In this document: piece by piece, positions 19,065 to 44,209 of the stretch
How positions within the stretch are numbered: the stretch's first letter is position 1
Layout: each line of letters starts with the position of its first letter
DNA from: Ruditapes philippinarum
Lineage: Eukaryota
Reading direction: 5' to 3'
DNA: 64,000 nucleotides
Assembly: GCF_026571515.1 (NCBI RefSeq)
Contig: NW_026859203.1
Coordinates: 248,001-312,000 of the forward strand
Notes under the pieces: generated by a model
What the model saw: only the letters and a program-made list of their open reading frames with translations
Told to the model about the DNA's origin: nothing
Databases searched by the model: none
Program-made: the position numbers and the translations under genes

Positions 19065-22000
19065 TCACATTTCCTCGTGTTCAATAAAATTTGTTTTTAA
19101 TTCATCTGCTCTATTAAAGTATCTTTTAAATAAAAATACACCAACAGCTCCAATCAACAACCCAAGTAGAAATGTACCAACACCAATACCAACTGTTGTT
19201 CCTGGAAACAGAAAAATAAAATACGAGGTAGAAAGAGATAGATTGAGATCATAGTACTTCAGAAAATAAGAGAAAAATTCTAAAATAATAATAGTAATAG
19301 TAATAATAATAATGATGAAATCAAATGGTTGAAATGAAATTTAGCACATTCTGTTTAATTAAACATGCTCATAGGAGGCAATGATCAAAGTATTCTGTGC
19401 GTCTACAAAATGAAAAACAACAACCGGGCAGTTTTTGAATGAACTTAAATCAAATGCTTAAGTCTTATCCAGCTGAAACCAAAAGTGATTAGCCTTTGTC
19501 AACCTGCAAACCTGTTTAGTCTGACCAAACTCTATACCTTAAGCTGACCAAATTAAAATATTCATTCTGATATTACTAAAGTTGCTAATGTACAGTTTAA
19601 AAACCGGCAGATTAAGGGTTAATTATATAATATATAGCATGATATAGTTTACTTCATGTTATATAGATCATAAATAGAGGATACAGAATGAGTACTTGGT
19701 CAATACTGAATTTATTGAACGAGTTGAATGCGAACCTCTGGCGAGCAAAATGTTATTTTATTCACGGGTTCAAAAAATCAGTAAAGAACCGACATGAATT
19801 TTAAAAAATGTTACACATGCCCAAAATAAAAGGACTTTCAAAATCAATACAAAAGAATCATTTTTATTGACGCGCCTATAGGTAAAATTTAAAATTTAGC
19901 GCGTCTTTACACNNNNNNNNNNNNNNNNNNNNNNNNNNNNNNNNNNNNNNNNNNNNNNNNNNNNNNNNNNNNNNNNNNNNNNNNNNNNNNNNNNNNNNNN
20001 NNNNNNNNNNNNNNNNNNNNNNNNNNNNNNNNNNNNNNNNNNNNNNNNNNNNTTTGTTAACGCAAATAAATAAAGTCAAAATATATGCACGGCTGTGCAA
20101 CTATTTTTACGGAGTCGCAAAATTGGCACGAGTATTAAAAAGACAATATAATGGCTACTACCAGATATCCATCGAATTATTTGTACTTGCAATATTTAAG
20201 ATCTATTTTCAATATAAAAATATCTCTAAATCTATTAGCTCAGGTATAATTTAACAATTAATTTCATTAAAGAAGTTTTTAGCTCATTACATGTACCAGC
20301 AAACGTTCCTAGTAATATCTCTTAAACTAATTTGTAAATTCTTGAAATGATGATAATGATATGTTTGAAAAACAAAATGCATTTCCGTTGATTTTATTTC
20401 TCAGTGTATATTGTTATGTATAATATAATGACTACCTGTAGAATTTTTAGACCCATTATTAGTCTGACGTTGTAATGACGAACAAGGCAAATTGTTTGTA
20501 GATGTCATAGATTTAGATGATTTAACTGTAGGTTGAATTGTAGATGTAGATTTCATTGTTACCATAGATTTCTGTGACACTGTTGGTTCTGTAAAGTTTA
20601 CATTTTAATGTCACGTAAATTGTGGTAAAATAAAATATTCATGGCCAATATCGTTGCAAATAGATATAAGCTTATCTTTTCAAACCTTATGGTTTGTATT
20701 ATTTTACGTATAAAGCAGAATATAACATTATATACCGTATTTTCGGTTTTAATATTTAATATTTATTTATTCATTTAACGTGGAAAATTAAAGTGGTATT
20801 AATCACAATTTATTCACAATATATATATCTTTTGTTTAAAGTGGTAACCCCACTAAGGTAAGTACATATCATACTTTTATTTGGTGTGGATGAAACTAGT
20901 GAGCTTTGACTCGTAGAAGATGTCCGAGATGTCTTAGGTTTCGTGTTTGATGATGGGAAAAATATCCCTGAAAGAGAATCGTATACAAGTATTAACAAGG
21001 AAACGTCTACGAAGAAAACGCAAACAGTTAGAAAATGAGTCGAAAATGAGCCTTCCCAAAAAGTAATTTATCATAATGTATACAAACTTACGAACGGCTT
21101 ACTTTTTTCAATACTATGTTGAAATTCTATTTAGGGCAAGATTGACCATTTATTTACTCTGCTGATATGAGGCTGAATTTATAAATCATATTTACCCTAA
21201 ATCAGTCTTGCAATTTCATAATCAACCAATAAATCTTTCTTACAATTTTACATTCAACCACTTAACTACTCATTCACTTAATCATTGAATCACTAAATAA
21301 CTAATTCACCAAATCACTTATTTACCACTCCTTCACTATATCGCCTCTTAAATGCCTTTACCGAATCATTCATGGATTTATTTATTCATTCATTCATTCA
21401 TTCATTAAATTAAACCTTACTTGATTCATTCATTCACTTTCGCTTCTTCACTTTATTACTCATTCACTGAATGATTTCACAATTAAATATATCCTTCATT
21501 AAATCACTCATGAATTTGTTTCACATTTAATACTCCTCATCACAAATCCTTAATCACAAAACTACTCTTTTCTAAATCTTGCTTATTCACAAAACTTGCT
21601 TATTCACTAAGTAATGATTAATGCTTTCTTATAAAACTTACTTTTATATTTGTCACAGAACTCTCCAGAACCTGTTGTCACAATACCATTGCTACCAGGG
21701 AGGTAGCAAGTTGTTGCTTTATCATTGTAATAAAACTCTGTAAATAAATGATAATATCATCAATTACATACAAATCTTGATTGCACAAAACTGGTATTTT
21801 GTTAGAGAAGACCTTTTATATGAAAACAATGCCATGTAATTTTCACTTGAAGCGATCATGAATAAAGATCCAAAATAAATGAAAAACACTGAGCGCATGT
21901 AAGAAACAAACTAAGACATGGGTAATACTCGTAGGGTAATACTCGTATTATCATATCTAATGAAAATTACTATAAAAACAGTTCAATTCTGTAAAAATAC

Positions 22001-25000
22001 ATACATGTAATAACTTTTGTTTATCTAGTTTTGATATGAAGTAATTAAGTACAAATTATAGGGGACAGTTAATTGTTTCATGTACCTTTACAATCAGTGT
22101 TCTGTAACTGAACACACTTTTTTGCACAGTCACTTTTGGTTACCCCTTGGAATGATAATACAGACGTAAAAGTATATGTCCCTGCGTTTATTGACTGGAA
22201 ATCCTTGTCGAAGTTGCCTGTAAAGTATATATATTGTCGTGTTAAGTAAAAAAATATTTCAGACATAAAACGCCTTGCAATTAAAAAAAACAACAACAAA
22301 AATATTAAGTAATAATAATAATAACAACAAATCCCCGACAAACAACAATAAAATACTGTAAGTTATAGTATCCAAATGTCTTATTTCTACTTTAAAAAAA
22401 CACAAAGTGTTATAACAGACAAACTTTATTTTATAAAAAACTTTCGATTATATCATATTATAAATAGGATGATTTTCATGCCTAAAAGAATAAATACTCC
22501 GATACCGAATTTCAAGTAAATTCTACTTATTTTGATGTATATTAACTTAATGCAATGTCATCAAGCAAAATCAGCACACCTTGCAATCAATGGAGATGTT
22601 GATCGAAGCTAACTAGTGTAATTAAGAAATAAAAACATTGGAAACAGCCCTGGCCAAACTAGCCAATACGTATGGATATTTTTTGTCTTTTCTAGTTTTT
22701 TTTTTACCTTAGAGCTCCACATGCAGGGGCATATTTGTTTCGGGATTGCTTTTAAGCATTTGATAAAGGTCTAGACATCTAACTTGTTTGTAAACTTTCA
22801 GATCATTCAATCAACTCTCGTTTTTTTCCATCATAATAATTTTCTTTGTAAAAAATTACTTAAATATGAAAAGCGTTTTGAACTCGAATTTTAAACTAAG
22901 AATCAAATCAATTTAATTCGGAGTACATCATTTCTTTATTACCCCTTTTCCATTTTAAGTGCCCCTATCGATCAACGAAAGACTTTCGTGTTGTTTTTTT
23001 TTAAAATGCTTTTGACGTCAGTGAAGCTCATTTAATCACAAATTTTAGAGTAAAATCTTATTGAATACAATCTAGTACGGTGTAGAACAAATATTTGTTG
23101 TTTTTAGTCATTTTGGCTTTCCCAAGAATATTAATAAAGTACGGATTGCTTGATGATAACTAAAAGGGAAATGATCCTTACTCATAAAGAGATTACAAGC
23201 TGTAAATGTCACATTTTTCTGTGGCCCAAATGTTCTCTCGAAATAATGTACACATTGTCTTGTATTAGTACAATATTCAAACATTCTACATTCAATGTTA
23301 CTGGTACATGACTGGGCACACTTTTCATCGGTCTCTAGTGTTGCAAAAGGTATCGATGTCTTGTCAAATGAAACTGTGCCCTCTATTTTAACATATTCAT
23401 TTATATAATTTCCTGAAATTACAAAACAGTTACATAAAATAATACTGCAATATTACTCTGAGAAATATCAAAAAAATTATTTTGAGAAAAGTTGCATATT
23501 TGAAATAACATTGATTAATTCAGAGTTGTTTTACAGTCGTCGTTTCTAATTTTAGCGGCAAATTATTAAGATAACATACTAACATTTGGTAATATAAGCA
23601 GAGAATTGCTTGTTTGTGTAAGAGTCAATTACAAAATGATAAATGAATATTAATCAGTACTGTTGTATGTTGTACAATTCGGGTTGCTTTGTATATCTTT
23701 GCTATCCAACAAATCAGGGTGTGTTTTACTAATCACACACAAATACTGGTTTCCACAATAACTGAATCCTCCACACTGGAACGAATTCTGAGTTAGACAG
23801 GCGCTTGCACAGCTACTTATATCTATGTACGACAACGTATTGTCTTCAGGAACGACAGTAGACTGTGAGTACATGTTGAAACTAAGGAGAGCATTATCTG
23901 AAAATAACAGAACCAGGGTAAGTAAGGTTCGTGGTTGTTTAACGTATATAGTTTAATATTTATGCTATGGTTATAGTTAAATTTAATCTTATTTAACATA
24001 AGCCTGCTTGTTTGATATACAAAAAAGGAATAATGATAGCGTGTTTCAAGACCAATTTAATAAAAAAAAATCGTCAAGAGATAAACATTCACATTAATTA
24101 TTTTTCATTTATAGATATTAAATACTTCATTATGTTTAAAACCAGTTGACGATTCTTTAGTATAGTCATTTGTTAGTTAATTTCAACATTAAATTTTTCA
24201 TGTAGTAAAGTAATTCAATCTATAACTACATATGAGAGTTTTAAACTCATCAAATATATCTTCGGCTTTGCTTGATAATTCAGGCCTACTTTAAGTATAC
24301 AATGTACATTCAAGTAAAACATGTTTCTCATATTCTAACTGTATCAAAAATACTAACTTTCATACAATTACAACAATGTCTCTTGTTAATATGGAGCACG
24401 TGTGCAGTCCCATTTCTAAAGTTGGTTATTGCACCCATATGCGGTCTATTTAAAAGTTGATTTTCAACACAGGTTTGTTCATTGAACGCCGCCTTTCCTT
24501 GCTGATCTTGTCTATCATATTTTTGCTTTAAACCTCTTGAAAATATGACCCGTAAAATATCTCTTTTTAATGAATCGTACGCATTTTTATTTTCAATGAA
24601 AAACGGTAGACATTTTCTTTTTGTGCCTTGTGTCTATAATATTTGATGAAAAATAATCTATTGTACAACGCCCTTTTCTCCTTCGAATAAAACTTTGCCA
24701 GACCCAACAACCTCTATAAGACATATGATATATGGAATTTGAAGTGGAACTTTTAGGATCTGGTTTTACGATACTTTCCTCAAATATTTATCAGTATTTA
24801 AACAAATATATCTTTTGAAAAAAAATGTTGTTTTGCGCCAATTAATCAAAAACTCATAGCACTAGAGTTCTAGAGATCTTATTTTGCCTTCCCAACATCT
24901 GTTTCTAAAAAACAAAACGAAAGATTCATAAAACTTACATTAAAGGAGACAAAACATAAACTTAAATGAGTCATAGTTTAAATATTCGAACACAGGCCAT

Positions 25001-28000
25001 AATTGTTTTTTTTACTAAGTGTGTCGTCTATTTCGTTTTTTCACAGAAAGGAACAATACTGAGGTTTTTTGACATGGCGGGACGGGAAGCTGTAGACATG
25101 AATGAAATAAACTAAGTCAAGTAAACCCAAGCCAGCCTTCACTACATGTTTAATTTTTGAAGCGAAGGTTGGCATTTGTTTAGTATATTGTTTTTTGAGG
25201 CCCTTATATGGAACGCCGTGACTGTCTTATGCTATCAATGTTTTTGCTATCTTGTGAAATGATGATATTATTTTGTCATTTAAGCATATTAACATGTGCA
25301 ATTTACATCATATCTTGTCTAAAGACAATGCTGACTTGTTCAAACAGCATGTTAACTTGTCGAATAATCATTATGACATGTGCAGACAACATGTTAACTT
25401 GTCAAAGTATCATGATGACTTGTGCAAACGACATGTTAACTTGTCAAAATATTATGATGACTTGTGCAAACGACGTGTTAACTTGTCAAAATTTCATGAT
25501 GACATGTGCAAACAGCATGTTAACTTGTCGAATTATTGTGATGACATGCTCATAATACCTTAACAAGTTAACATGTGTTTTGCACAAGTCATCACGATTT
25601 TTTGACAAATTAACATGTTGTCTGCACAAGTCATCATGATAATTTGACAAGTTAACATGTCGTTTGCACAAGTCATCATGATATTTTGACAAGTTAACAT
25701 GGCATTTGCACATGTTATCACGATACCTTGACAAGTTAACATGTTGTTTGCACATGTCATCATGAAATTTTGACAAGTTAACATGATACTTTGACAAGTT
25801 AACATGGCGTTTGTACAAGTCATCATGACATTTTGACAAGTTATCATACTGTTTGCACATGTCATCATGAAATTTTGACAAGTTAGTATGGCATTTGCAC
25901 AAGTCATCATTATACTTGGACAAGTTAACATGTCGTTTGCACAAGTCATCATGATACTTGGACATGTTAACTTGCTGTATGCACATGTCATAACGATAAT
26001 TCGACAAGTTAACATGCTGTTTACACATGTCATAAAGGAATTTTGACATGTTAGCATGGCATTTGCACAAGTTATCATAATACTTTGACAAGTTAACAGT
26101 ACGTTTTGACATGTCAGCATGATACAAGATAACATGTCATTTGCACAAGTCATCACGATTCTTTGACAAGTTCACATGTTGTCTTCACAAGTCATCATGG
26201 TTATTTGACATGTTAACATGCTGTTTGCACAAGTCATCATGATACTTTGACAAGTTAACATGCTGTTTGCACATGTCATCACAATAATTCGACAAGTTAA
26301 CATGTCGTTTGCACAAGTCATCATTACATTTTGACAAGTTACCATGTCATTTGCACAAGTCATCATTATACTTTGACAAGTTACCATGTCATTTGCACAA
26401 GTCATCATTATACTTTGACAAGTTACCATGTCATTTGCACAAGTCATCAAGATACTTTGACAAGTTAGCATGTTGTCTGCACATGTCATCATAATAATTT
26501 GACATGTTAACATGCTGTTTGTACATGTAAGCATGTTCCTTTGACAAGACATGATGTAAATTGCACATGTTAACATGCTCATACGACAAAATAATATCAT
26601 CGTTTCACAAGATAACAAAAACATTGATTACATAAGACAGTCACGGCGTTCCATACCCTTAGCTGAAGACTGATGGAAACGACCGAAAAATTGGGGTTGG
26701 AGTCGGTTTGTTACAGGGGTACGGGGTACGGTTGTGTTTTTGGGAGGGAAAGATGCAAATTATAAAAAGAAAAGGCAATTCACGAAAGAAAATTTGTTTT
26801 AAAATGAAAGGGTTTTTTTATGATTAAAAATGTTGTGAAGAGGATGTGTTATATTTTTAATAATTAAACATTTTGTGACGAGGATGTGTTATATGGGACA
26901 TGGAAGGCAGATGCAGTTACACCATGTTTATAACATGGCTTCGAGACCGAGTGTCTAATTACCTTTACTATCGTGAAGTTTGTCTGATAGAAAAACGTCT
27001 TTGATATATTTTGCAGGGAAAACTTTATTCTGTAAATCATAATGAAATATTGAACTTCTAAGCTAGTGTATCATTATTATCTCAGCCTTTGTTAGCTTGA
27101 TGGTTGTTATTTTAACACCTTAACTATATGCATACTACTAATTACTATTCAACATAAATTTATGTCTTAAAAGCCTAGTAATAATAGACTTTACTATCTC
27201 TAACTATTTCGTTATATTTACGAGGGGTGATTCAGAAATCATAGAATCAACAATTAATCATTTAATGTTCATATAACAAACATCCTCTTATACAAGAAAA
27301 GAAAAAAGAAAAAAATTACAGTATGATCAGCACGTGCATAACTATAGCAGCATAGTTATCTCGTACAACATATTAGACAAATGCCATTACATTATATATC
27401 AAGTTCTAAGTCATAGCTCACCTTTTCTGTCCCAGGTATAGGAATTTTCATTGTAAGATTATTCTGGAAGATGGAATTTTGTAAATTCAAAAACGCTATA
27501 AGATTGGTCGATTCAGTCGTTGATTGGTCCACGGTTCCTAAAATAAGTAATAGATATATCTTATATGAAAATAGCTCAAAGTCTGTTTGTAGGAAAGTAA
27601 AGCCTCGAATTGCAAAATTTTTTGATTTCCTTAAAATACATGTTATCCAAAAAGATAATTTTACTTGGTATATATTTTAAAATAATTCAGTATGTCACAA
27701 CATTTTAATGAACGTAAATAATTTTTAAATTGTCATTCAATTATATTTTATTGCAGGAACAGATTCGGACATTTACACAAACTTACTTGAATAAGAAATA
27801 CATGTTGTATGTTCTTGATTTGCACCATCCGGTACATGTTGTATGCTTAGCAAACACTGGTTGCTGGAGGTACATACATAAAAACTGTTACAAATGAAAT
27901 CTGTATTACTAAAGCACGTAGCGGCACACTGGCTTGGACTTTGGGGAACAGTTACAACTTTGTCGACATGTTCTGGAACATATCCACTCTTCAGTCTGGT

Positions 28001-31000
28001 GAAATATACTGTAAGATGCATAAACAAAAATGAAACATAAATTTGTATGTTATTTAATGAATAACACATAAATAATTTCGGATTTAATAATGAAATAAAT
28101 AGCGCATTCATCAAATGTGTTAAGTTTCAGTTCATTTAGATATGTTCAGGAAAAAACTGCTAAGAAGGCCAGATTGGGTATTTCGTGAACAAATCAAAAG
28201 CACTATTTTTAGTTATGCAGCCTAGTAAGGAAGCTTCTTTCATTGCAGCATATTGTTTTTGTTGTATTTCTTAATATTGACAATCATATTTTTCTAGTTC
28301 TTCCTTATATAAAGGTTGACAAAATAAAAGAAGCAAGTGGTAGTTCCGTAAAAACACAAATATGATGTAAATGTAAGTTCTATTTTTAAAACACATGAAG
28401 TCATACTTTTTCACAAGAGAGAAATAATCAAATAAGTCTAATTTGTCTAATGCTAATCTCTGACCATTCCTCAAATGTCACTTTATTGTACAGATGAGCA
28501 AAAAGAAATTGACCAGCTGAGTGTAGATAGTCTGTTTAATTAAGGTGGTAACTTGGTTATACAAAGGCATTCACAAACGTTTAAAATAAAACAATATGCG
28601 AAAACAGCTATCAATTTCGTTTATAACTAAAATGTATTAAAAGTGCTTACACAATTTGTTCGGTTGTTCAACAAGAGAACTTGTTAGATATATATTATCA
28701 TTATCATGATCAAGACGTGTTTGTTGAAATCTGTGTATAGATGCACCAGATAACTTGGACATTTTGAATGTTGCTTCTATCAGAAATATTTTAGTACTGG
28801 TCCGTAGATATTCTTCATATTTTCCTGCAAATCGTCGAAGAAAATAGAATTTTATCAAAAAAAGATTATGTTCTTTTCCTGTTCAATGGCGTCTAATGAG
28901 CTGATTATTAAATAACTTTAATTGTTTGTCATTTGCACAGTTAATAAAGGTATTCTCAATTAAAGACATCTTAGATTGCTAAATATAACACTTGCGTTGT
29001 CAACTTTGACACTTCAAGAATTTAAGCTTTTGGAATCCTACCTGGAAAAGTGATTTGAAACTGCTTTGTATTTTGTGTTTTGTAGCAATGTGGCACGTCA
29101 AAAACAGAAAGATCTGGATGTCCTACATCGAAGTTGTAGAAATTATATTCCATGTAGTATGTTGGCTGCAGGATAATTGTATAAATATAGTTGCTTATTA
29201 ATAAGGATTGTTTACACAGCAATATGTGAACGCTTTTAGTTTTGGAAGCAACGAAATCTTACATGAAAGATAATTACACGCGCAACGGCTTAGCATTAAC
29301 CTGTACGTTTTCAACTTAAAAAAAGTATTAACACAAAAGAAAGAGCTTAAATTCATCTTAAATAAAATTAACTGTTTGGGATTTGAAAAATATCAGTTGA
29401 AAAATGAGATGAACTAAAAAATATAAGCAACACAAATATACTGAAACACTTTAAGGTGTTATAACAAAGACAAAAAGAAAATAAATTGAATTGTGTGAAT
29501 TTAAACCTGAAGGACTGTCACTTCGAGTCTAACAGGTTGACCGATTGCACCTCCTAAATATCCATCACTGATTTCCATCCAATCATCCTAAATGCAATAT
29601 TTTATATAAACATTGTATACTTATATAAATAAATCAATGACAAACGCGAAATAGTAATATATTTAATAATAATACGGCATTTAAACCTCTAAATATGACC
29701 GTTAGCATATGGAAAGTACAGTTCATATATTATTTCACAAGGTTACTTAGATTCAGCGTTTTGATGAAGCACACATATATGGATGAACCACATAAATAGT
29801 ATTTATAAATGTAATTAATATATGATATATACTTTATGTCATTTTATCACGTGGTGATTAAAGAAAATGGCTTATATACACCTTGCTTAATAAACCAAAG
29901 AATATGTAAATACGTTTACCAACATATATAACAATGAAAGAAGATGATTATTTTTCATTAAGGAACTACGATTGTACATGTTTGAATAAAGGAATAATTT
30001 TAACAACATTTGTTTTCCCCCTTTTAAACTTGTTTTGAAAATTATTAAAGGAAAACTAATTTATCAATATATTACAAGTATATACTTACAGAAAGAAAGG
30101 AATATCGGAATATTGCATTTACGGGTTTGTTATTAAAGATATAATCTTTCCGTAAAGATTCAAATACGTTGCATGCCATTCCACGGACAGTTTGCTGCAA
30201 AATAAACATTACAGTATTAAACGCAACTGACATTTTTTGTACTATTTTAAATTCAGGAAAGTTAAGACGATGTACGACATATTACAATCATGACAATATT
30301 AAATATGAACTAAAGTCAGCAAAAGGCAAGAAACATGAATATTAAATTCAGGAGTAGAAGCATAAATAACAAATTCAACAAATTCAAAATACAATTCAGA
30401 GAACAAGCATGAAAAATAGTCAAAGAGGAAAAATCAGAATACAAAAATAATAAAATTTCAAACTAACTCACTTGACCAACAAAAAAGTACGAGTCGTCAA
30501 TAAGGAATAGTTGTAAGGGGTCTTTTATGAAAAGTTTGTATGTTGAATTAACTGACTGATTCGGAGACATATTTGCACCAAAATCAAAGTCCCCAATCTG
30601 AGTTACTGTGCAGTTACGATATGCTTTATCTGTCACGTATTTCATACCTACAACAATAAACATATGACAAATAGTGACCTTACTTAACTGATAATACACA
30701 ATGATAGCTTGCCTTTCAGACAACATTATACACAACAAATTATTCGATTCTGTGATTTTAAAAAATTGTACTGTCTGCAGATGATTAGTATTGAATTTGT
30801 ATATATGTAATGCCATAAAGTGATTGTAGATTCTATTATGAGTTAACGTTTAAAAATACTTAATGATATATGTTTGACTGTATTATATGCTTTTTGGTAA
30901 GCATGGGAATATTGCCCGGATGTATTTTTGAAATCTTGTATTTGCAGCTAACTCAAACAGGCAATGAATTGTAATACTACGATAGTTTAAGCATATCCTT

Positions 31001-34000: not shown

Positions 34001-37000
34001 TTTCTGATTCTGCATTTTTCTCTCCAAGTTTATATAGGTAGTAATTGTAGTCTATTGAGCAACAAACATGTGATTTTGGTTTTCCTAATCGTTCATTAAT
34101 AAGTACCTAATCTTGGTTCAAATATTTATGTATGTAACTTACAAAACACATTGTCTTTCACATCTAGTGTCATTTGACTTTATTTGTTCGCTTTGGTATT
34201 AAATTGACATTATGCTAATTTTGTTTCAAATTTAAGTTGAGCTGAAGTAACGATATATTGTTAAAGAGGTGATTGACCAACAGCTTATATTTGAAAATGT
34301 TAACGATAAAATTCAAATCTGCCTAAAAAATAAAAAAGACAGCCTAATCTTTTATAAATTGAACGTTTCAGGTAAATTCCAATGGATATTAACAGAACTT
34401 TCCTTGGGCCACGTGGGTTATTTATCGATAAAGCGAAGTAAATTATAAAATTGAAAGGAGGGCCGGCAAAATGTAATTTTATTTTGATTTTTATGAGTTC
34501 ACTCACTTTATACCCTTGAATAAATGAATTGTGGATGATTAAGTTACAAAATCTCAAAATATTGGGCAACATTGACAAGAGCCATGTCAACATGGCCATC
34601 TCCCGCCGAATGTGTTTGCTCATTGGAAGAATGTATATGTAGTAGAGCAGAATAATTCAATTTTAAGAGGTCTTTTGGTAATGAAAACTGATGGCTGAAG
34701 TGATAACAGATTTGAAACCTATGTGAATACTAATGGCTGAAAATAACAAAGGGTAATAACTGAAAAATAATGCAGGGTAGGTTATCATTCTTGTGTGCTG
34801 CACCCCTCCTCAGTAACATGTATCCACCTATGAAGTTTCAAGTTGATACCTCAAATAATTTTGAGATAAGCTCCGGACAAAATAGTATGAAAAAGAACAA
34901 AGGGCAATAACTCAAAACTATATAGGGAAGAGTTATCATTCTTGCGCACAGCATTCCTCCTCAATAAGATCTATCCACCTATGACATTTTATGTTGACAT
35001 CTCAAACACGTTTGAGTTATGCTCCTCTCAGGTGAAAAAATAAATACGAAAAATAACATAGGGCAATAACTCAAAATTTATGAAAGGTAGAGTTATCATA
35101 CTTATGCACTGCACACCTCCTGAGTGAGATCTATGCACCTATGAAGTTTCATGTTGATATCTCAAAGGCTTTTTGAGTTATGTTCTGGACAAAAATTAAT
35201 TTTGAAAAATAACAAAGGGCAATATCTCAAAAATTATGCAGGGTAGAGTTATCATTCTTGTGCACTACACTCCTCCTCAATGAGGTCTATCCACCTATGA
35301 AGTTTCAAGTTGATACCTCAAATACTTTTTGAGATATGCTCCGGACAAAAATGTCGGACGGAAGGACGGAAGGTCGGACGGACGGACGGAGACTTTTTAT
35401 ATATCCCCCGCCGCCTTTTCGGCGGGGGATAAAAATGCCGCAGGACCTGTTTGATTGAGCCTGTTCATAGAGTGGTTATTTAAAAATACCGTCCATACCC
35501 TTATGATACGGAAGCATATTTTATTTCTACCATATAATTACACTGACATATAAAGGTTCTGTGCCCTGCAATAGTCTCAAATCGCAACATTTAAGATCAC
35601 TTGTTTCTTTTGATTGTAAACTAATGGCTTACCATCTTACACAAGCACCATTTCATAATCTTACATGTTTAAGGTAGCCCTCCTTAAGTTGCTTGTTGAA
35701 ACATATTCGGTATCACATTTGTTTCATTTTTTTATCGTGTTCCATTGTTTCTACTTGCTTCAAAAATACTAATCAGAACTTTCTTCTCATATTTTTGCCT
35801 ATCTTTTATTTTTACGGACATAATAAATTTTTAATATTTCTGACATCATGTCGAGAATTAATATGTTTGTTACGATATAATTCTATGATATTTTATCATT
35901 TATGTTTTCATTTACAAGGACTACAGTGGATATAAAGATGTAATTTCTGTATTATAATGCGGTAATGTGGCACATGTCATGGTTAATACTCATATATCAA
36001 TATTGTATATAACAGCTTGTCTGTGACCATTGTATGCTCTGTTATAACAGAATTAATCTATTATTCTCGAAGGAATCAGTAAGAGCAATCCAGGGCTATG
36101 ATTTAAATAATTTCATTTCTTGATTTTGTTTTCTCTATTTACTTCAAAGTAATTTGTTAAAATGTTAAAACTCCAGTTTCATTCTTTTATCTCATTAATC
36201 ATTATGATAATATTAAAATAACTGAACTCACCAGAATATGCTGTTTTATCCAATAATGTTGCACTCACAAACAGATTGGCATCATCATAATCTATATTGA
36301 TGTTAGAAATTCTCAGTATTGAAACCTGCATGTTTTCAGCAAGAATGAGATGCGACCATTCTTTTATTGTTGGAACCTCCTTTGCAACCAATGTACCTAT
36401 TAAAATGGAATAATTTAATACCAATCGAACCAACATAGATAAGCTTTGTAAATATATTATATCAATTTGATAATTGCATTATACAAATTAAAAGTGTCGA
36501 TTGTGAATATTTTGCAAAGGACATCAATAAAAAAAGTTTTTTTGTTGTTTTTTTTGTGGTTAGTATGAAAAATTTAGATTTAGTTCAGGCAAGAATCACG
36601 GTTTAAGATAGTTCGTGTTTGCTAAATGATAACTCATAGTACTGTTTAATAGATGATTAAAATTCAAAGTCAAACTAGAATTTAGCATATTGACCTATAG
36701 TTTTGTAGATTCAAGTTAAAAACAGAATATAGCGAATTTGTATTTGGAAAGGTAAACAAAAGAATACTCTCTTACCTGGAAACTTAAGTTGAAAACTGAT
36801 TTTATTTGCTTCAAAAAAGCATTTGCTGATATCAAAAACATCGAGACTAGGCGGGTTAGGGTCGAAGTCGACAAAGTTAAAAGTGGTACTAAAGTCTCTC
36901 TGAAAACATATAGATTATGTACCTGAATATTGTCTTTTTAATACATAATACAAAGTACATGCATGACATAAAAGTACTGTAACTTGATCATATAGATTAT

Positions 37001-40000
37001 TGTCATTTAAGGTAATACACTGTATATACTGTAATGTATCAATAATATGTCAAGAAATTAATGTTGACCCTACCCAGATACGCGTAATTACTTCTTAACA
37101 CTTTCTGAAATTTAAATATTTTTGTTATATCTCTGAATTGAAAGTGTCTTACTAGTTCTTTAAGTTAAACAATGAAATAAATTTGTACCTCGTAAACATA
37201 GATTTCCATTTGTACAGGAACAGATGTGCTTGTCATTCCTTTATCAGAGTCGTGAAAATTTGACCATTCTTTCTGAAATAAAATAATAAGTCACAAATGA
37301 CTTTAATTTTATATGACTTTTTTGGGAATGATAATATGTTTGGAATTTTTAGCATTCATATTTTACTGAAAAAGAAATCCTTTTATAGTGCGTACTTATT
37401 TTACTTTTTGTTAAAATGTTACAATGGTGTTTCTAACTTTAGAACAGACCATAATTAATTTCGAGATATATGCTGTTTTACTAGAAGTTTTCAGTGCAAC
37501 ATTTTATTACTAAATAGCATTGCTTCTGTGTGCTGACATTGCTAATGTTGGCCGTTGTGTTAAGAGACCAACATAAGACACTGGCAAATGGCATTGTGAT
37601 TGTGTTTTATGCCAAAACAATGCCTAATTGATTCTCCCTTTTCTACCTTTTAAACACATGCACTGTAGCAGTTTTCAGCGCAAACATCCCTGTAGTTTCA
37701 TATATCGCTTTCTACCTAATACGACAGATAATTTAATAATTCTCTTAACACCACTTATCTTCACATAAAGCCATCAGGAATAAGCCATGGAAACGTTTTA
37801 TTGTGAAAAAGTATCCAAAATGAATTGAAATATAACGTATGCAAGAAGAAAATTTTATAAAATATGTATATGCACCTAGAAAAAAAAATGACATGAATCT
37901 CCGGCGACTTCATCATATTGCTCGAGAGACAGGATAAATTAAAAAAAAATCATTGTAAGCTGTCGTTTTGTAAAGGAAGCAATCTGTTTCTGTTGATAAT
38001 TTAGTGAAAAAACTATCAATACATTAATGAAGAGCATATGCTAATTTTAATCAAACGTCTAATTGATTGGACATAAACAGATAAGATGGAAACATTTCAG
38101 AACGCCCAAAATGGCAAAATTAAAAATTTTGGCAGTCACGGTTTGTTTAAGCCTTACATGAACGGTAATTGAACATCCAATGTAACGTTTCTGGACCCTC
38201 AGCACCGACTAAGCAGATATCAACAATTAAATATGTTTAGTGTAAACGTTATAAACACATGTGTGTCCAGCACAAGAAAACAAGTCAATATCAACTTTTG
38301 TCATTCTAAATATAGAAGCTTAATATAAATTATCAAGCAAAACATATCAAGAAATATGAAGAAACATGCAGATATTTTGAAAACGTAAGACTATTTATTA
38401 AAACTTTATCCCCTATCAAATTTTCATTTGACTGAGTACCACCTCGTCGTTTCCTCGCGAGGATACATCATTTTTTTCACTTGGGGACCATAACCCGCTT
38501 TTTATGACATTGCACCACACAAGAGTCACATTTAAGGCTACGTAAGAACACATCTGCGACAGGCGCTTAATTTAAGATAACACCATTTTCAATTAAACAT
38601 ATTGCATTATGCTCAAATCAGCACTAACCAAGTAAGCCACGTTTTCAACTTTCTCGTCTAGGTAGGACTTTTAAGGTTTCCGTTTTAACTATTCTGATAA
38701 ATAAATTCATAGCCAAACTAAATACATAAAAATAGGCCAGTGAAGAGCGAAGGGCTAACAAATTGTAAAGAAGTAAAACATATTTTGCCAGGACGACATA
38801 CATGCGCTAAAGGTACTTACAGATGTAAAGTAGAAAGTGATGGTACAATTTTGGTTGCTTATAAAACCGTTGATTGTAAGGTTCTTCGTTTGGGCAATGT
38901 AGGTATCGCACAGTATCCCCCTCACTGGATTCTACAACGTTTGTAGAAAACAAGAAGATGAGAGCAACAAAAGTTTGATGACGTCATTAATATTTCAAAA
39001 AGATTAAAAGGTGAAAGCTGAATTGTGGAAATGTTTGATTATTTAAAATAATGCAAAAGATAGAAATACGATATATCCTATATAATTGTATGCGTCGTGT
39101 TTACATTTTTATTACATTATAATACTATATATAAATATGCTACAATTAGCAAAATTGAAAATAAAACATGAAGTATGTACCTGTCCAATGTAAGTGTAAT
39201 TCCAGTCTAAATGAAACAGCTGAAGGGGATTTTTCAAATCAATTATAAATGACCCATTGTACTTGTTAGTATTGAGGGACGTGTCTATTAAATTGGTGGA
39301 CAATGATGTCGTCGTACAATTACCGTAAGATTTATCGATCACATATCGAACACCTGAAATCATAAAATCTTCTTAGGTTTCTCAGACTATAATCTTTATA
39401 ATAATGCTTACTTAATCGTAAACTATGAATTAACACATCGTGATTTACAATTAATAAATAAAAAATAAGTTTTATTGCGTTGACGTTGACGAAAGTGTCT
39501 GTTATTTTGTAGTTACAGAAATATATTTGACAATTATGAAATTCTTTAAAAAGTGTGCTTTATTTTGAGATGATAAGTTGAACTAACCTGTTTTATAGTC
39601 ATGTATCTCAGTCAGTGGGTGCATTGTATATATCGGATATAGAGGTATGAGTGGATGATAATCTCGTCGGAATAATTGGAATGACCCATCATACCATGTC
39701 TATAAAATACAGTTTAACCTTGTTGAGGAATGAACAAAGGAAAATATAATTATCTACGGAAATATTTTGATTGATTATATTTTTGTTTTGTATATAAACC
39801 TTATACATTGTAATCATTATAAATCTTAATTTTGTTTGATTGGTAATAAAGAAGTGATTATTGTCATATCACAGACTCACATCTTCAAATGTAATGGCTG
39901 ATAAATCTGGATATATTCTCTCTGTTCTGTAGTAGAATCTTTTCGGTAAAGTTGGTAATGGCTTCCCTTGTTTTCTTCCCGGACAGAAAACATTCGGAGG

Positions 40001-43000
40001 TGTCTAAAATGTTCAATAGAATAGATTTATAATGGGTTTTCTTCAAGGTTAATCTCTTTTTAAACAGTATAATGTTTTATGTCTGAAATTTCATTTTACA
40101 TTTGAAAGTTTAATTTACTAGTAATTAATGCCATTCCTTTTTGGTTATTGTGCAAACACCCTAAATATTGGTTTGATGTGTACTTCGTGGTTGACCGCGA
40201 TAGGTTTTAATTCTGTTATATGGGAAAATATATATGTAGCAATCAAAAATTATCACATACTAAAAATAAAAATATTATTCAGTACTGAAATTGGTTATGC
40301 TTTTACAATTAATTGTAAATGTGTCAGAGTTAAATCGTATACATATACATGTACAGTGCGTTAACTGGAGTGCAGGTATCAGTTACCCGCACTCCAGAGC
40401 AGGCCCATTGATTGGCTTATTTTTGCTGGGGTTTACTTATTGTGACGGCAGAGAACGGGAAAAGCGATAGAAATATCATATTCAGATGCTCGTTCATTGG
40501 TTCCTTTTTTCTAGGGTTTCATATTGTGACAACAGGGACCCTGTTTGACTATGATACAAGAAAGAAAGAACATCAAAACACTCGGCAATCTGATAAATAC
40601 TCGGGGGCTACGCCTCCTCGTATAAATCAGATAGCCTCGTGTATTTACTTAAATTTCAATTTACAACACAATTCATGGGTCAATCAAGTCTGGCTCAGAG
40701 GATTGATGAAAATATCTAATCAAACCATTTTGGAATATGTTTTACTTATCACAAATTAAAAAGAAAATGCAAATCCAAGTAACCAATAAAAATAAGGAAG
40801 TAAAATTGTATAATGTTAAAATATTACATATAACCTGGAATACTGTATCATCTATGGCGTCACTTCCGGGTTTGTAATTGAAGTAATCATAGACATGGTG
40901 CATATTATAAACAGTCCCATTGACAAACGTTTTATAACCTTTGACTTCCGCTTTCAGAGGAGCAGACGATACTGTTGATGAGGTAGACCAATTGCTTGCT
41001 GGAAAACCAGATAAAATAATTTTCAATATATAAGTAGAAGCTGTTATTGCAGTTTTATAGTGTGACAAAATATTGAAGTCATATATTCTATTTTTTATTT
41101 TATTTTTTATTCAAACTTAGAATATATGATAGTGATGTAAAAGTTTTAGGTTTTCAATTTATTTTGACAAATTTAAAACATGACACATCCTGATAATTAC
41201 CGCTGAAATAGTAGTCTATTGTAAAATTATTCCACGATGGGATGCTGAGACAACTTTTCCAGTGGTTGGCGACTATACCGCGAACGTTCTCCTGGCCAAT
41301 GTAAACCTATAATACGACAAAGTTACTTATTTTGCATATCAATAATAGATTTAATTGAGACAAAATATGAATATATAAGTATATAAGGTTTTAGTTTGTA
41401 CTTAATATTATTTTAATATTTCACTTTATTATATAGTGCCAACGATTTAATAATGGCACAATTTTGTGAAAGAGATGTGACACTTTTAATTGTCTCTCAT
41501 GAACAGACTAAATCAATAACATCTTCTCCTATCTAAATACTCTCTTTTCATAATCATTGATGAATATCCCTCTTTAAAAATTCAATATACTGGATATGCT
41601 TATTTATTTATTTATTTATTTATCTATTTCAATTTACCTCTCCAAACCGTTTTCCGAAATGTAGAACTGATTGGGTATCATTGATATGAGGTTTTCCCTG
41701 TGACATATACATCCCAAACCATTGTACATAATCACTTGTAGAAAGCGTACTTGTTGTACACGTATTCCCTGTAAAATTACAGTCACACACAATGGTCAAC
41801 ATCAATTGTATGTATATAGAAAGATTAAAAATATGTTTTGCAATGTGGTAAAAAAGGTGACGGCAACGGAGACAGTGCTTCTAACAGTAATAAAGTAGGA
41901 TTTGGAAGTGATAGAGATGAGCGGAGTGTGTCTGATGATATAAGTTTACGCATCTTTCAGCCAAGTAAACATGGGACCCAGATCTGTTGTATCTACTAAG
42001 TCATTTAATCTCCGTCCTGTTTCCTAACATGATTTCTGTCGAGGTAAGCTAAGGAAACACATTATCTGGAGTAATTCATCAAAGTTGTAAGCATACACAG
42101 TAAAAGAGTAAAATAACTATGAATAAGATGTCGAAGTACTTTATGATGGACCTCGTGATGTCTATAGATATTAACGTTGTAGTGTTGAAATTTGCAGATG
42201 TCGTTATGTGATGTTTGTGAAAAAAATGCCACTTATATAAACAATCAATAAATGATACATTTCTCTAATACACAAGACAACATCAATGGCAATATGCCTT
42301 TTTAATTGTTTATATTTTTATGATAAGATTTATTATAACCGTATACCTGAAATTTCGTATATCTCATCTGTTATGAAGTTGAAAATAAGTTGTCCATCTA
42401 TTCCATGTTCAAACAATGTTATTGTAGCTCTGTTACCTGGGTAATCGTAGTACCATTTAGCAGATATTGTCTTCTGTTTGTCTATTATGTTTACTTCAAC
42501 ATTTGTTTGAAATCCATCAAGAAGATATGGAAAGGCTGGACCTGTAATAAAAGTATGTTTTAAACATACCTGAATATGAAACCATTTTGGACATTTTTTA
42601 ATGAAACCATCTACTGGTAGGTGAATTATTTATCATATGACAAGTGACGTTTTCATATACTAGTACACTGAGAGGTATCTGTATCTATCTTCCATTTAGT
42701 CAAACCCCTGCTGGGAACCTAGACTGTATTTCCTAGAATAGTTATAAATTCTAAACGCTGAAAATCAGGAAAAGGGAAAATCCATCGAGAGCAACCAAAA
42801 CAAATGTCAAAAGACTTGGTTTGATTGAACATTTCTAAGGTCCCCCTAGCACCGGCTTTAGCATTATTCAATCTTCAACACAAGTAAAACTATCCCAAAG
42901 GACCAGAAAATACATTAACAAGGAGATTTTTAAAGTATGAACTAACAATATTTAGAGATAGTAAGGGAAAAGTTTTGAAAAATGTCACACAGCATGTCAA

Positions 43001-44209
43001 CCTTCTGTTGTGAGTATTAAAATGTAAAAAAAATTCTCAAGAGGGTGTAGCACACTTATTTATTTTACCTGTTGCTGCTGTCGGCTTTATTTGGTCACAT
43101 ATACTGCTTGCACAAACCGTATGTTGATTAAGTAGAAATATTAGCAATGACACTTTCAGTGCTAACAATATAGGCCATTTGTAAATCACCTAAATGGAAT
43201 ACAAACATACATGTTTTACACATTGTAGCAGCAATATATGAACGAAAGTCAATTTAAACAGAATTTCTTTACAATTTTTGACAACAAGTATTGTTTACTA
43301 TCAAAAATAAACATTACGAAAACTTCCTATACATGTATATTGTCCAACAATATTGACCTGGCACTTCATTATCGTAAAGGTCATTGTATAAACACTGGTA
43401 TATAACGAATATATCGATATACTTGTTACCTTCAAACGTCAGTGACGTGATGTGTTTTAGTATAGATGCTGTTCTACCGATCTAAAGGTTTTTGGTTCGA
43501 TTCTTTACCAATACCACGTTATAAAGATACACTATTTTTTTTTAATTTACATGAAATAATTAATTTGAAATCGTTTTACAATATATCTGGATAGTGATTG
43601 TATACAATTATATTGTTTTTATTTCATTCCATTAGAAAGTACAGCGAGTTAATTATACAAATCAATGATTTCAAGTCCATTTCACTGGCAGTGTCAGTCA
43701 TACTGCCCATACTGACGGTTTCCATGTCAGCGCTCGTGTCATCACTAGATGTATCAGCAAGGTTTATAATTATTTTCTCCACGTCATGGTCTCTGTAGCA
43801 GTCATGTGTGTTGCTTTAGCATACACGCTTTATATGCAGGTATCAAGTATACTACACAGATAGTTAACACACAGTGAAAATAAGAATCCCTAAAGAAAAT
43901 CCAAAACGAAAAATTTGAAAATGTTGCAGACTCGGTTTGCTCGAGTTTTAAAAGAACGATATTTTTAAGATAAAAAATAAAAATGGCTGCACCAGGATTC
44001 AAACCTACGAGTTTACGTCTATTTTCTTGCAGTGAAAGACTTTTACCGACTGCGCTAATAGAGATTCTTACATTAGACTATTTAGCAACTGGTGATTTAC
44101 ATTCATATCGATTTACAAATACATGTAGATCGTAACGTCTAATATTGTTGGACAATACACACCCCTGCCCATCAATGTTTTAACAAAAAATACTCACCGT
44201 ATATATCAT
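19065..44209 (-). CDS. ~1448-aa type I membrane protein with 3 ependymin/LolA-like repeats, 2 SEA-like folds, 5 PAN/Apple domains, S/T stalk and TM
   Basis: 33 GT-AG exons, all in phase, 4347 nt including stop: 44198-44209, 43069-43189, 42347-42541, 41638-41768, 41201-41306, 40835-40998, 39881-40003, 39588-39699, 39181-39353, 38821-38931, 37189-37272, 36776-36899, 36232-36396, 32859-33083 (PAN1), 32179-32285, 31894-31927, 31396-31499, 31119-31230, 30472-30647, 30090-30194, 29507-29587, 29042-29165, 28651-28824, 27787-28008 (PAN2), 27422-27537, 26963-27029, 23661-23897 (PAN3), 23182-23412 (PAN4), 22086-22217 plus 21642-21737 (PAN5), 20875-20967, 20436-20588, 19065-19201 (TM). Signal peptide WPILLALKVSLLIFLL; PAN motifs CAxxC..F.C.SF..C; TM VGIGVGTFLLGLLIGAVGVFLF; tail KRYFNRADELKTNFIEHEEM. 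The 12-nt first coding exon is the least certain. Confidence 0.88.
19663..20208. mobile_element. TIR-type DNA element spanning the gap (left part also at ~10449-10680)
   Basis: The left end ATAGATCATAAATAGAGG and the right end CAATATTTAAGATCTATT are imperfect inverted repeats. Confidence 0.45.
19913..20052. other. Assembly gap (140 N)
   Basis: Run of n in the last intron of the membrane-protein gene. Confidence 1.
21260..21610 (+). repeat. Degenerate (ATTC/ACTC)n microsatellite tract
   Basis: Perfect ATTC core at ~21384-21405 inside degenerate TCAC/TCAT repeats. Confidence 0.7.
25207..26655. mobile_element. Non-autonomous IS3EU-like foldback DNA transposon with 42-bp internal tandem arrays
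   Basis: Termini TATGGAACGCCGTGACTGTCTTATG...CATAAGACAGTCACGGCGTTCCATA (25 bp perfect, over 140 bp imperfect). 6-bp TSD CCCTTA at 25201-25206 and 26656-26661. The 42-bp unit ATGACTTGTGCAAACGACATGTTAACTTGTCAAAGTATCATG switches orientation at ~25553-25565. Confidence 0.85.
34575..35432 (+). mobile_element. HINE (Helentron-associated element, pearl/BIV160-like) with ~155-bp satellite monomers
   Basis: 5' ACAAGAG start and subterminal repeat TCTCCCGCCGAA. About four monomers AAATAACAAAGGGCAATAACTC... at ~34741, ~34892, ~35050 and ~35207. (GGAC)n microsatellite. 3' palindrome TCCCCCGCC...GGCGGGGGA. No TSD. Confidence 0.85.
38095..38240 (+). repeat. Dispersed fragment of the ~640-bp repeat family
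   Basis: GGCAAAATT...CGGTTTGTTTAAGCC...AGCACCGACTAAGCAG matches the unit at 14741. Other fragments: ~35433, ~42760-42875, ~43880-43950, ~47000-47420 (-), ~49715-49785 (-), ~61858-61925 (-). Confidence 0.65.
43984..44063 (-). mobile_element. tRNA-derived SINE head / tRNA pseudogene
   Basis: On the minus strand: box A TAGCGCAGTCGG and box B GGTTTGAATCC. The cloverleaf is degenerate. Confidence 0.5.

What the first reader, a model, noticed from the sequence alone, without database searches (positions are those of the whole stretch)
19065..44209. Giant cell-surface protein combining ependymin/LolA-like repeats with PAN/Apple domains: candidate lipid or glycolipid capture receptor
Seen: a complete 33-exon ORF (~1448 aa) with a signal peptide, three ~200-aa repeats and five Cys-patterned PAN domains. 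The repeats share P.LP..F...E, (W/Y)YD, (H/E)DY.TG..Y..D....NC, (Y/F).GQ..VRG (followed by C in repeats 2 and 3), W......P...E(V/I), F.(N/D)FD...P...VFD...C. A Ser/Thr stalk, one TM helix and a 20-aa tail follow. Knowledge: this motif order resembles ependymin-related proteins (EPDR1 adopts the bacterial LolA/LolB lipid-carrier fold), which are usually small, soluble and single-domain; PAN/Apple domains bind proteins or glycans. Inference: a membrane-tethered multivalent lipid-binding scavenger or adhesion receptor without a catalytic tail. I recall similar uncharacterised invertebrate surface proteins (ESP9-like / LolA-like metazoan repeats), so the family may exist in databases without a known function.
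Basis: partly seen in the sequence, partly recalled or inferred. Interest (0 to 1): 0.8.

Follow-up and report, generated by a model that had tools for sequence, protein, structure and literature searches.

The report
Clam surface protein with LolA-like cups
This is a real, expressed Manila clam gene for a 1448-residue membrane-anchored surface protein carrying three ependymin/LolA-fold "lipid cup" domains and five PAN/Apple domains; databases already list the family, which occurs in molluscs, a brachiopod and an annelid, but nobody has studied its function.

Summary
On the minus strand, 44209 to 19065, 33 exons with GT..AG introns give 4347 nt, or 1448 aa. Each exon translates exactly to successive parts of RefSeq [quoted passage not shown].

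The N gap (19913-20052) lies inside the last intron. Spliced RNA contigs from two studies join 20436 to 19201 across it.

An AlphaFold model of repeat 3 of the Mactra orthologue finds EPDR1 and sponge EPD-BCP1 as its ten best PDB matches (E about 1e-8). LolA, VioE, RseB and LprG follow. The three repeats are homologous to each other (hhalign 98-100%).

Pfam Ependymin stays below threshold (21.8 bits against 32.3). Pfam 38.1 files the repeat under PF25898, LolA_2nd_metazoa.

Five PAN domains, a Ser/Thr stalk, one TM helix and a 20-aa tail are confirmed.

Long-form orthologues occur in bivalves and gastropods. Shorter forms occur in a brachiopod and an annelid, and a chiton has a form without PAN. 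A short tail motif is shared by most of the tails compared, across three phyla.

Lipid or hydrophobic-ligand capture remains an inference: no pocket or ligand was tested. Verdict: a catalogued but unstudied family, of moderate interest.

The parts
44198..44209 (-). exon 1 (ATG, MIYT), phase 0
   Evidence: donor GTGAGT
43069..43189 (-). exon 2: rest of the signal peptide and the first Cys of repeat 1
40835..42541 (-). exons 3-6 (42541-42347, 41768-41638, 41306-41201, 40998-40835): repeat 1, LolA/EPDR-like, 4 Cys; P0112 residues 32-250 together with the start of exon 7
36776..40003 (-). exons 7-12 (40003-39881, 39699-39588, 39353-39181, 38931-38821, 37272-37189, 36899-36776): repeat 2, LolA_2nd_metazoa/EPDR-like; residues 251-486
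   Evidence: (Ependymin 21.8 bits at 313-351)
36232..36396 (-). exon 13: N-terminal half of alpha/beta module A (helix plus beta hairpin)
   Evidence: topology taken from the model
32859..33083 (-). exon 14: PAN domain 1, a symmetrical phase 1-1 exon nested inside module A
   Evidence: (PAN_1 E=3.4e-8)
31894..32285 (-). exons 15-16 (32285-32179, 31927-31894): C-terminal half of module A
29042..31499 (-). exons 17-22 (31499-31396, 31230-31119, 30647-30472, 30194-30090, 29587-29507, 29165-29042): repeat 3, LolA_2nd_metazoa/EPDR-like; residues 664-897
   Evidence: (PF25898 precomputed on the exon 19 ORF)
28651..28824 (-). exon 23: N-terminal half of module B
   Evidence: (MA~MB E=3e-46)
27787..28008 (-). 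exon 24: PAN domain 2, phase 1-1, nested inside module B
26963..27537 (-). exons 25-26 (27537-27422, 27029-26963): C-terminal half of module B
   Evidence: (the RNA contig runs from exon 27 into 26965-26994)
23661..23897 (-). exon 27: PAN domain 3, phase 1-1
   Evidence: PAN_1; joint 23660|23411
23182..23412 (-). exon 28: PAN domain 4, phase 1-1
21642..22217 (-). exons 29-30 (22217-22086, 21737-21642): PAN domain 5, split by an intron; 5 Cys instead of 6
20436..20967 (-). exons 31-32 (20967-20875, 20588-20436): Ser/Thr-rich stalk with one membrane-proximal Cys
19913..20052 (.). assembly gap, inside intron 32 (20435-19202); not filled
   Evidence: spliced contigs X1 and X7 skip 19201..20435
19065..19201 (-). 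exon 33: TM helix, 20-aa tail (…TNFIEHEEM) and stop codon

Best explanation
Shown: this is LOC132755602 of the Manila clam, a type I membrane glycoprotein of 1448 aa. From N to C terminus it reads: signal peptide; LolA/ependymin-fold domain R1; R2; alpha/beta module A with a PAN domain nested in it; R3; module B with a nested PAN; three further PAN/Apple domains; a Ser/Thr-rich stalk with one conserved Cys; one TM helix; and a 20-aa acidic tail. R3 plus module B is an old internal duplicate of R2 plus module A. The gene is transcribed and spliced as modelled at its 3' end.

Inferred: each of the three cups offers a hydrophobic groove like those of EPDR1, the sponge carotenoprotein EPD-BCP1, LolA and LprG. 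The protein would hold hydrophobic ligands (lipid, glycolipid, lipoprotein or carotenoid) at the cell surface. The PAN domains would bind protein or glycan partners. The short tail, whose motif recurs in other phyla, would couple the protein to sorting or uptake and not to enzymatic signalling.

My odds: architecture about 0.95; hydrophobic-ligand capture as the function about 0.4.
For: Gene model: all 33 exon translations match P0112 exactly and in order, and they are colinear with the Mactra orthologue from residue 3 to 1371.

Transcription: RNA contigs of two studies show six joints (exons 27 to 33) at exactly the modelled splice sites. They then continue upstream into exon 26 and for about 1240-1290 nt beyond. 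RNA runs hold 14-18% of the words of 20053-30052, which matches the exon share of about 17%.

Fold: the AF2 model of R3 of the orthologue P0002 has pLDDT 74, pTM 0.72 and 11 strands. Foldseek ranks 1-10 are all EPDR1 or EPD-BCP1 (E 1e-8 to 1e-7, target TM 0.55-0.68), followed by LolA, VioE, RseB and LprG.

Sequence trace of the same relationship: a profile of R3 puts EPDR1 first in the PDB (E=0.2). That alignment places the YD...R motif on the stretch of EPDR1 that holds D70/R77, and the NC cysteine on the cysteine of TKQC, which is C113 by my count from D70 (residue numbers from PMC6363788). Ependymin hits are sub-threshold but recur at the same motif in six relatives.

Ligand precedent: EPDR1 binds GM1- or BMP-containing liposomes and has a groove of about 3200 cubic angstroms (PMC6363788). 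EPD-BCP1 binds astaxanthin (PMC10470211).

Conservation: the same domain order occurs in bivalves and gastropods. The tail motif is shared with Lingula and Owenia.
Against: Pfam Ependymin is below its cut-off. R2 and R3 lack the N-terminal cysteine of EPDRs.

The fold was predicted on an orthologue that is 50-73% identical to the window's repeat 3 exon by exon, not on the window's own protein.

The 5' half rests on the RefSeq model and on colinearity with orthologues.

Some members of the LolA superfamily bind proteins and not lipids; RseB, for example, binds RseA.
Confidence: 0.45

Rival explanations
1. It is an adhesion or matrix-binding surface glycoprotein. The LolA/EPDR-fold domains act as protein-protein or matrix-binding scaffolds and the PAN domains bind glycans. 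No lipid is carried.
For: PAN/Apple domains are typical of adhesins and matrix proteins (HGF, plasminogen and the SML-2 lectin are the structural matches). The mucin-like stalk and short tail fit a passive surface protein. RseB, a member of the LolA superfamily, binds a protein (PMC6363788).
Against: The unifying property of the LolA/EPDR superfamily is a hydrophobic pocket (PMC6363788, PMC6608618). Three copies of that fold kept since before bivalves and gastropods split argue for a function in the cup itself.
Confidence: 0.25
2. It is an immune pattern-recognition receptor. The cups would recognise microbial lipids or lipoproteins, and the PAN domains would add glycan recognition.
For: Mollusc EPDRs are reported to respond to pathogen challenge (PMC6280359). 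This genome is rich in PAN-containing lectin-like mosaics (earlier notes of this scan, unchecked). Paralogous loci exist.
Against: Bivalve and gastropod orthologues show the same long-form domain order, and short forms occur in a brachiopod and an annelid. That is unlike fast-evolving immune receptor families. No induction data were seen here.
Confidence: 0.15
3. The 33-exon model wrongly fuses two or more neighbouring genes, for example secreted LolA-like proteins and a separate PAN membrane protein.
For: I read RNA only for exons 26-33. Short RefSeq models containing only R1, or only R1-R2, exist in gastropods (P0099, P0093, P0120).
Against: One RNA contig links the TM exon through all three terminal PAN domains into module B and runs about 1240 nt further. 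All phases fit, with no stop codon over 33 exons. The same order is predicted independently in more than 10 species.
Confidence: 0.03

Closest known systems
Ependymin-related proteins (EPDR1/MERP, fish ependymins, sponge EPD-BCP1; Pfam PF00811)
   Same: They share the 11-stranded curved sheet and are the best structural matches. They share the YD...R motif, and the NC cysteine lines up with EPDR1 C113, whose partner C210 lies in the C-terminal tail like the repeats' last cysteine. Both are extracellular and N-glycosylated.
   Different: EPDRs are soluble, single-domain proteins of about 213 aa with their own signal peptide (PMC6280359). Here three copies sit inside a 1448-aa membrane protein. 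The Pfam score is below the cut-off. R2 and R3 lack the N-terminal cysteine and carry an extra one after VRG.
Pfam PF25898 LolA_2nd_metazoa (with PF25897 LolA_1st_nematode and PF25899 DUF7959), Pfam 38.1
   Same: The database's precomputed annotation puts PF25898 on this protein, on its exon 19 ORF and on its orthologues. Atlas clusters named 'Metazoan 2nd LolA-like/PAN domain-containing protein' match at 0.97.
   Different: These are catalogue entries only. I found no paper and no function. The nematode and PAN-less mollusc clusters lack the PAN domains, and the internal duplication is specific to the long form.
Bacterial LolA/LolB, LprG, RseB, VioE (LolA superfamily)
   Same: The same fold class appears further down the same Foldseek list (E 3e-7 to 1e-4). 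The superfamily's common theme is a hydrophobic pocket.
   Different: The bacterial proteins have no disulfides and are periplasmic or cytosolic. There is no detectable sequence similarity. The matches are weaker than those to EPDRs.
PAN/Apple domain proteins (plasminogen N-terminal domain, HGF N domain, apicomplexan microneme lectins)
   Same: Five PAN_1 domains are present. Four have the six-cysteine pattern and their structural matches are as expected.
   Different: Here PAN is an accessory module. Two copies are nested inside another domain. No kringle, protease or lectin partner domain is present.

Membership tests
Ependymin-related proteins (PF00811) | LolA-type curved antiparallel sheet of 11 strands | tested here: met
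   AF2 model of orthologue R3: 11 strands, pLDDT 74. Foldseek top 10 are all EPDR1 or EPD-BCP1 at E about 1e-8. R1 and R2 are tied to R3 by hhalign at 98-100%. The window's own repeat was not folded.
Ependymin-related proteins (PF00811) | Match to the Pfam Ependymin model at its gathering score (32.3 bits) | tested here: not met
   P0112 scores 21.8 bits, E=2.1e-4. Exon by exon there is no hit. The own-genome scan with PF00811 hits other contigs but not this window.
Ependymin-related proteins (PF00811) | Conserved cysteines: the three universal ones (alignment positions 23, 94 and 186 in PMC6280359) | tested here: inconclusive
   The 94-like (NC) and 186-like (C-terminal) cysteines are present in all three repeats. 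The 23-like N-terminal cysteine is present only in R1, which has 4 Cys in a profile-1-like arrangement. R2 and R3 lack it and have a cysteine after VRG instead. Disulfide bonding was not tested.
Ependymin-related proteins (PF00811) | Asp/Arg pair conserved across the superfamily (EPDR1 D70/R77, VioE D38/R45) | tested here: met
   In the R3 alignment of 10 species, D40 is nearly invariant and R47 is invariant, seven residues apart. This motif aligns to the EPDR1 stretch that holds D70 and R77. The window has it in R2 (YDGSFQLFR) and R3 (YDDGYKMIR). In R1 the spacing differs.
Ependymin-related proteins (PF00811) | Small secreted single-domain protein of about 213 aa with its own signal peptide | tested here: not met
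   The repeats are internal domains of a 1448-aa type I membrane protein.
Ependymin-related proteins / LolA superfamily | Open hydrophobic groove that binds a hydrophobic ligand | not testable with these tools
Pfam PF25898 LolA_2nd_metazoa | Match to the family model | tested here: met
   Precomputed Pfam annotation on P0001 (the exon 19 ORF of the window), P0112 and its orthologues. The name comes from Pfam 38.1 through the Atlas. The model is not in the local Pfam copy, so I could not re-run it.
PAN/Apple (PF00024) | Pfam match above the cut-off and the six-cysteine hairpin pattern | tested here: met
   PAN_1 finds 5 stretches at 72.4 bits against a cut-off of 21.4. PAN domains 1-4 have six Cys; PAN5 has five.
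SEA domain (proposed by another first-stage note for modules A and B) | Beta-alpha-beta-beta-alpha-beta sandwich recognisable by sequence or fold search | tested here: inconclusive
   The model of a Haliotis relative gives strand, long helix, beta hairpin, [PAN], helix, three strands, at pLDDT 70-90. Foldseek finds only PAN matches and nothing at E<=0.001. Pfam finds no SEA domain.
Bacterial LolA/LolB lipoprotein carriers | Periplasmic carrier of the Lol pathway, without disulfides | tested here: not met
   This is a metazoan multi-exon gene for a disulfide-bearing extracellular protein. The LolA matches rank below the EPDR matches.

The most novel reading that the evidence does not exclude
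The protein stands for an unstudied class of type I membrane receptors found across lophotrochozoans, and possibly protostomes. On a mucin-like stalk it displays tandem EPDR/LolA-fold cups followed by an alpha/beta module (probably Pfam's DUF7959). It would act through a short cytoplasmic motif (..F-V/I-N/E-K/H-E..) that recurs in molluscs, a brachiopod and an annelid. That would make it the first membrane-anchored hydrophobic-ligand receptor of the ependymin superfamily. It may also be the 'missing' relative of ependymins in nematodes, where canonical EPDRs are reported absent.
Probability: 0.3. Interest if true: 0.65.

Novelty: new member of a known kind. Interest (0 to 1): 0.4.

Why it matters
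Ependymin-related proteins are widespread, and their biochemical role is still unsettled. All studied members are small soluble proteins. A conserved membrane-anchored protein carrying three such domains, with a tail motif shared across phyla, would show a second way in which animals use the LolA fold: as a cell-surface receptor and not as a soluble carrier.

The gene also gives a clear case of exon shuffling. Phase 1-1 PAN exons are nested inside another domain, and a chiton relative lacks them.

For bivalve biology, the protein is a candidate for lipid, carotenoid or microbial-lipid handling at epithelia. As it stands, however, the gene is already annotated and the domain is already catalogued. 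The value of this report lies in the characterisation, not in a discovery.

Tried and rejected
Scans of single exons against Pfam found PAN but no Ependymin. Profiles built from exon triplets found nothing in the PDB.

A word search with the R3 alignment found no single-domain relatives of 130-413 aa. This search only sees relatives that share exact words.

A profile of the full-length family found only PAN structures in the PDB.

I first placed exon 4's acceptor further upstream by analogy with R2 and R3. I rejected that because there is no AG there. RefSeq agrees with 41768.

A first dynamic-programming gene model missed exons 2, 10, 20 and 21 and invented small ones. I replaced it.

All whole-protein work used database proteins returned by the tools (P0112, P0002 and others). 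Scripts only checked phases, single split codons and exon-by-exon identity.

Instead I folded a whole stored Haliotis protein by its id. That left the module's fold unassigned.

The pdb_via and pdb_via_wide libraries were absent. The Atlas could not read new sequences.

The read-laying output showed letters that some reads carry across the N gap. I neither used nor repeat them.
Full report
**What is there.** The window is AT-rich (about 30% GC) and comes from a 1.4-Gb genome. The coding signal of the finding lies on the minus strand.

I built an exon chain from open segments, splice-site scores and reading phases. I corrected it by hand at exons 15-16 and 24-27. RNA contigs and the database protein settled three boundaries.

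The final model has 33 exons between 44209 and 19065. All introns are GT..AG. The coding length is 4347 nt, which gives 1448 aa plus stop.

The word search with a Mactra orthologue returned P0112, RefSeq [quoted passage not shown], 1448 aa. Each of my 33 exon translations occurs in it at 100% and in order. The genome is the Manila clam, as earlier notes of this scan had said.

**The gap.** The N run 19913-20052 lies between exon 32 (20588-20436) and exon 33 (19201-19065). I laid two sets of RNA contigs and two raw-read RNA runs on 18700-24699.

Contigs from two different studies (X1, X7) join 19200/1 to 20435/6, with CT..AC at the ends of the skipped part on the + strand. They show five more joints at exactly the modelled sites: 20588|20875, 20966|21641, 21737|22086, 22216|23181 and 23411|23660.

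At 23899 both contigs continue into letters that match 26965-26994, which is exon 26. They then run on for about 1240-1290 nt. That is the summed length of exons 17-26, but I did not see those letters.

The gap is therefore intronic and the frame is continuous across it. It sits in a repeat that is transcribed elsewhere. I did not fill it.

RNA runs hold 14-18% of the sampled words of 20053-30052, which equals the exon share. The raw-read runs gave almost no depth on the exons.

**Anatomy (P0112 numbering).**

- Signal peptide: 1-31.
- R1: 32-250.
- R2: 251-486.
- Module A: 487-663, with PAN1 at 542-617.
- R3: 664-897.
- Module B: 898-1090, with PAN2.
- PAN3, PAN4, PAN5: 1091-1321.
- Ser/Thr stalk: 1322-1403, 44% S+T, with one Cys.
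- TM helix and 20-aa tail: 1404-1448.

Pfam finds five PAN_1 stretches (E=2.7e-20). Every PAN unit is a symmetrical phase 1-1 exon, or an exon pair for PAN5. This is the classical signature of exon shuffling.

Profile-profile comparison of columns cut from a 12-species alignment gives:

- R1~R2: 98.1% probability.
- R1~R3: 98.9%.
- R2~R3: 100% (E=5e-69).
- Module A~B: 100% (E=3e-46).
- Unrelated control pair: 0.2%.

So R3 plus module B is an internal duplicate of R2 plus module A.

**What the repeats are.** Sequence alone gives a weak but consistent answer. Exon-level scans miss Ependymin. Whole proteins give sub-threshold Ependymin hits at one and the same motif: 21.8 bits in P0112, and 16-26 bits in five relatives, against a cut-off of 32.3.

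A profile of R3 from ten species ranks human EPDR1 first in the PDB, but only at E=0.2.

Structure settles the matter. I folded R3 of the Mactra orthologue, which is 50-73% identical to the window's repeat 3 exon by exon, with a ten-species alignment. The model has pLDDT 74, pTM 0.72 and 11 strands. Its ten best Foldseek matches in the PDB are mouse, human and frog EPDR1 and the sponge carotenoprotein EPD-BCP1 (E 1e-8 to 1e-7, probability 1.0, target TM 0.55-0.68). LolA, VioE, RseB and LprG follow.

The HMM alignment places the repeat's YD...R motif on the EPDR1 stretch that holds D70 and R77. These are the Asp/Arg pair that Wei et al. found conserved between EPDR1 and VioE. It also places the "NC" cysteine on the cysteine of TKQC, which is C113 by my count from D70. 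Its partner C210 lies in the C-terminal tail, as does the last cysteine of each repeat (PMC6363788).

R1 has four cysteines, including an N-terminal one, like "profile 1" EPDRs. R2 and R3 lack that one and carry a cysteine after VRG (PMC6280359).

The database's newer Pfam annotation files the repeat under PF25898. The Atlas names this family LolA_2nd_metazoa (Pfam 38.1). The protein's nearest clusters there are "Metazoan 2nd LolA-like/PAN domain-containing protein". The local Pfam copy lacks that model.

My reading is that the repeats are a divergent sister branch of ependymins within the LolA superfamily. They are not ependymins in the strict sense.

**Modules A and B.** Another first-stage note on this window called these SEA-like domains with PAN inserted. 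I folded a whole stored Haliotis protein that contains one such module.

At pLDDT 70-90 the model shows a strand, a long helix and a beta hairpin. PAN follows, then a helix and three strands.

Nesting is supported in two ways. The two halves flank a phase 1-1 PAN exon. In the chiton relative the halves lie 15 residues apart with no PAN at all.

The fold itself stays unassigned. Foldseek finds only PAN matches and Pfam finds no SEA domain. The module may correspond to Pfam's DUF7959, which travels with PF25898 in the Atlas clusters. That is a guess.

**Family.** An exhaustive HMMER search with an alignment of exons 9 and 19 found 90 proteins.

- Long-form orthologues (1300-1480 aa) occur in Mercenaria, Mactra, Mya, Mizuhopecten, Saccostrea, Tegillarca, Solemya, Haliotis, Pomacea, Littorina, Lottia and Aplysia. 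All are labelled uncharacterised or "Apple domain-containing".
- In the orthologues scanned, the R1, R2 and R3 profiles each score best on their own repeat in most cases. The triplication therefore predates the split of bivalves and gastropods.
- A short form (R1-R2-module(PAN)-PANs-stalk-TM) occurs in Lingula (761 aa) and Owenia (1001 aa), and as paralogues in Haliotis and Saccostrea.
- A chiton has (R1-R2-module) twice and no PAN.
- The clam genome holds at least seven more loci with such exons. None lies in the flanks of this window.

All the orthologues whose C-termini I compared have one TM helix and a short tail. The motif ..F(V/I)(N/E/K)(K/H)(E/N).. recurs in Ruditapes (TNFIEHEEM), Lottia (IQFIKHEDE), Haliotis (VHFVNKEND), Lingula (LSFVNKENSE) and Owenia (VHFVNNPQ).

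I found no paper on these genes or on PF25898.

**How it probably works.** The architecture is shown. The function is inferred.

The LolA/EPDR fold binds hydrophobic ligands in its concave face wherever it has been studied. Examples are lipoprotein acyl chains, triacylglycerides, PEG or lipid in EPDR1 together with binding of GM1- or BMP-containing liposomes, and astaxanthin in the sponge protein (PMC6363788, PMC6608618, PMC10470211).

Three such cups held on a glycosylated stalk, next to five PAN domains, suggest capture or presentation of hydrophobic molecules at the cell surface. A short tail whose motif recurs across phyla, and which has no enzyme domain, points to sorting or uptake. I put this at about 0.4.

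The rivals are a pure adhesion or matrix role (0.25), an immune receptor for microbial lipids (0.15) and a mis-fused gene model (0.03).

**Limits.**

- I could not inspect a pocket, because no coordinates are handed out.
- The fold was predicted on an orthologue, not on the window's protein.
- RNA evidence was read for the 3' quarter of the gene only.
- Tissue of expression is unknown, because run names are coded.

**Verdict.** The family is already catalogued (RefSeq, Pfam 38.1) but has not been studied. It is a new member of a known kind, of moderate interest. The interesting side points are the tail motif shared across phyla, the nested PAN insertion, and a possible link to nematode LolA-like proteins.

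Noticed in passing
window 25292-26548 (intron 26): A 42-bp minisatellite of about 30 copies lies in two blocks of opposite orientation (25292-25548 and 25563-26548). It stays open in several frames on both strands, so it produces false ORFs of 150-216 aa (MMTCANDMLTCQ...).
   Followed up: partly
window 24477-24524 (intron 26): About 12,000 reads of one RNA run match only 31-48 letters here and then continue into unlike sequence on both sides. This looks like a short word shared with some abundant RNA or repeat. Rfam finds nothing in 19000-44300.
   Followed up: partly
window 19700-20110, around the N gap: The flanks of the gap belong to a repeat with very high contig depth (751 in X1). Many reads bridge 19912 to 20075 with fewer letters between than the 140 N written. 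The gap is therefore probably shorter than written. I did not fill it.
   Followed up: no
window 22086-22217 and 21642-21737 (PAN5); P0112 residue 1388: PAN5 of the clam protein has five cysteines where Mactra and the family consensus have six (…FYYND… against …FYYC…). Most relatives compared have one membrane-proximal cysteine in the stalk. Either cysteine could make an intermolecular disulfide.
   Followed up: no
P0112 313-351; relatives P0005, P0113; PDB 8rnu: The hairpin IHDFNxGxxYxID...NCxVxP also draws weak BRICHOS hits (Pfam 19-22 bits in two relatives; ITM2B in the PDB at E=0.9). This is probably a local resemblance and not homology.
   Followed up: no
window 8435-8839 (+): An open segment carries a C-type-lectin-like motif (WIGLTDTKTEGKFEWDG), possibly an exon of a neighbouring lectin gene.
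   Followed up: no
window 59725-60162 (+): An open segment carries a reverse-transcriptase-like motif (LLDLQKTFDTVDH), probably a retroelement remnant.
   Followed up: no
own genome: C12113:60-73 kb, C8340, C9577, C9217, C8096, C6977, C11773: These are further loci with LolA_2nd-like exons. C12113 has two copies of the domain within 12 kb, so it is probably a second long-form or tandem gene. Canonical ependymin exons lie elsewhere (C9375).
   Followed up: no
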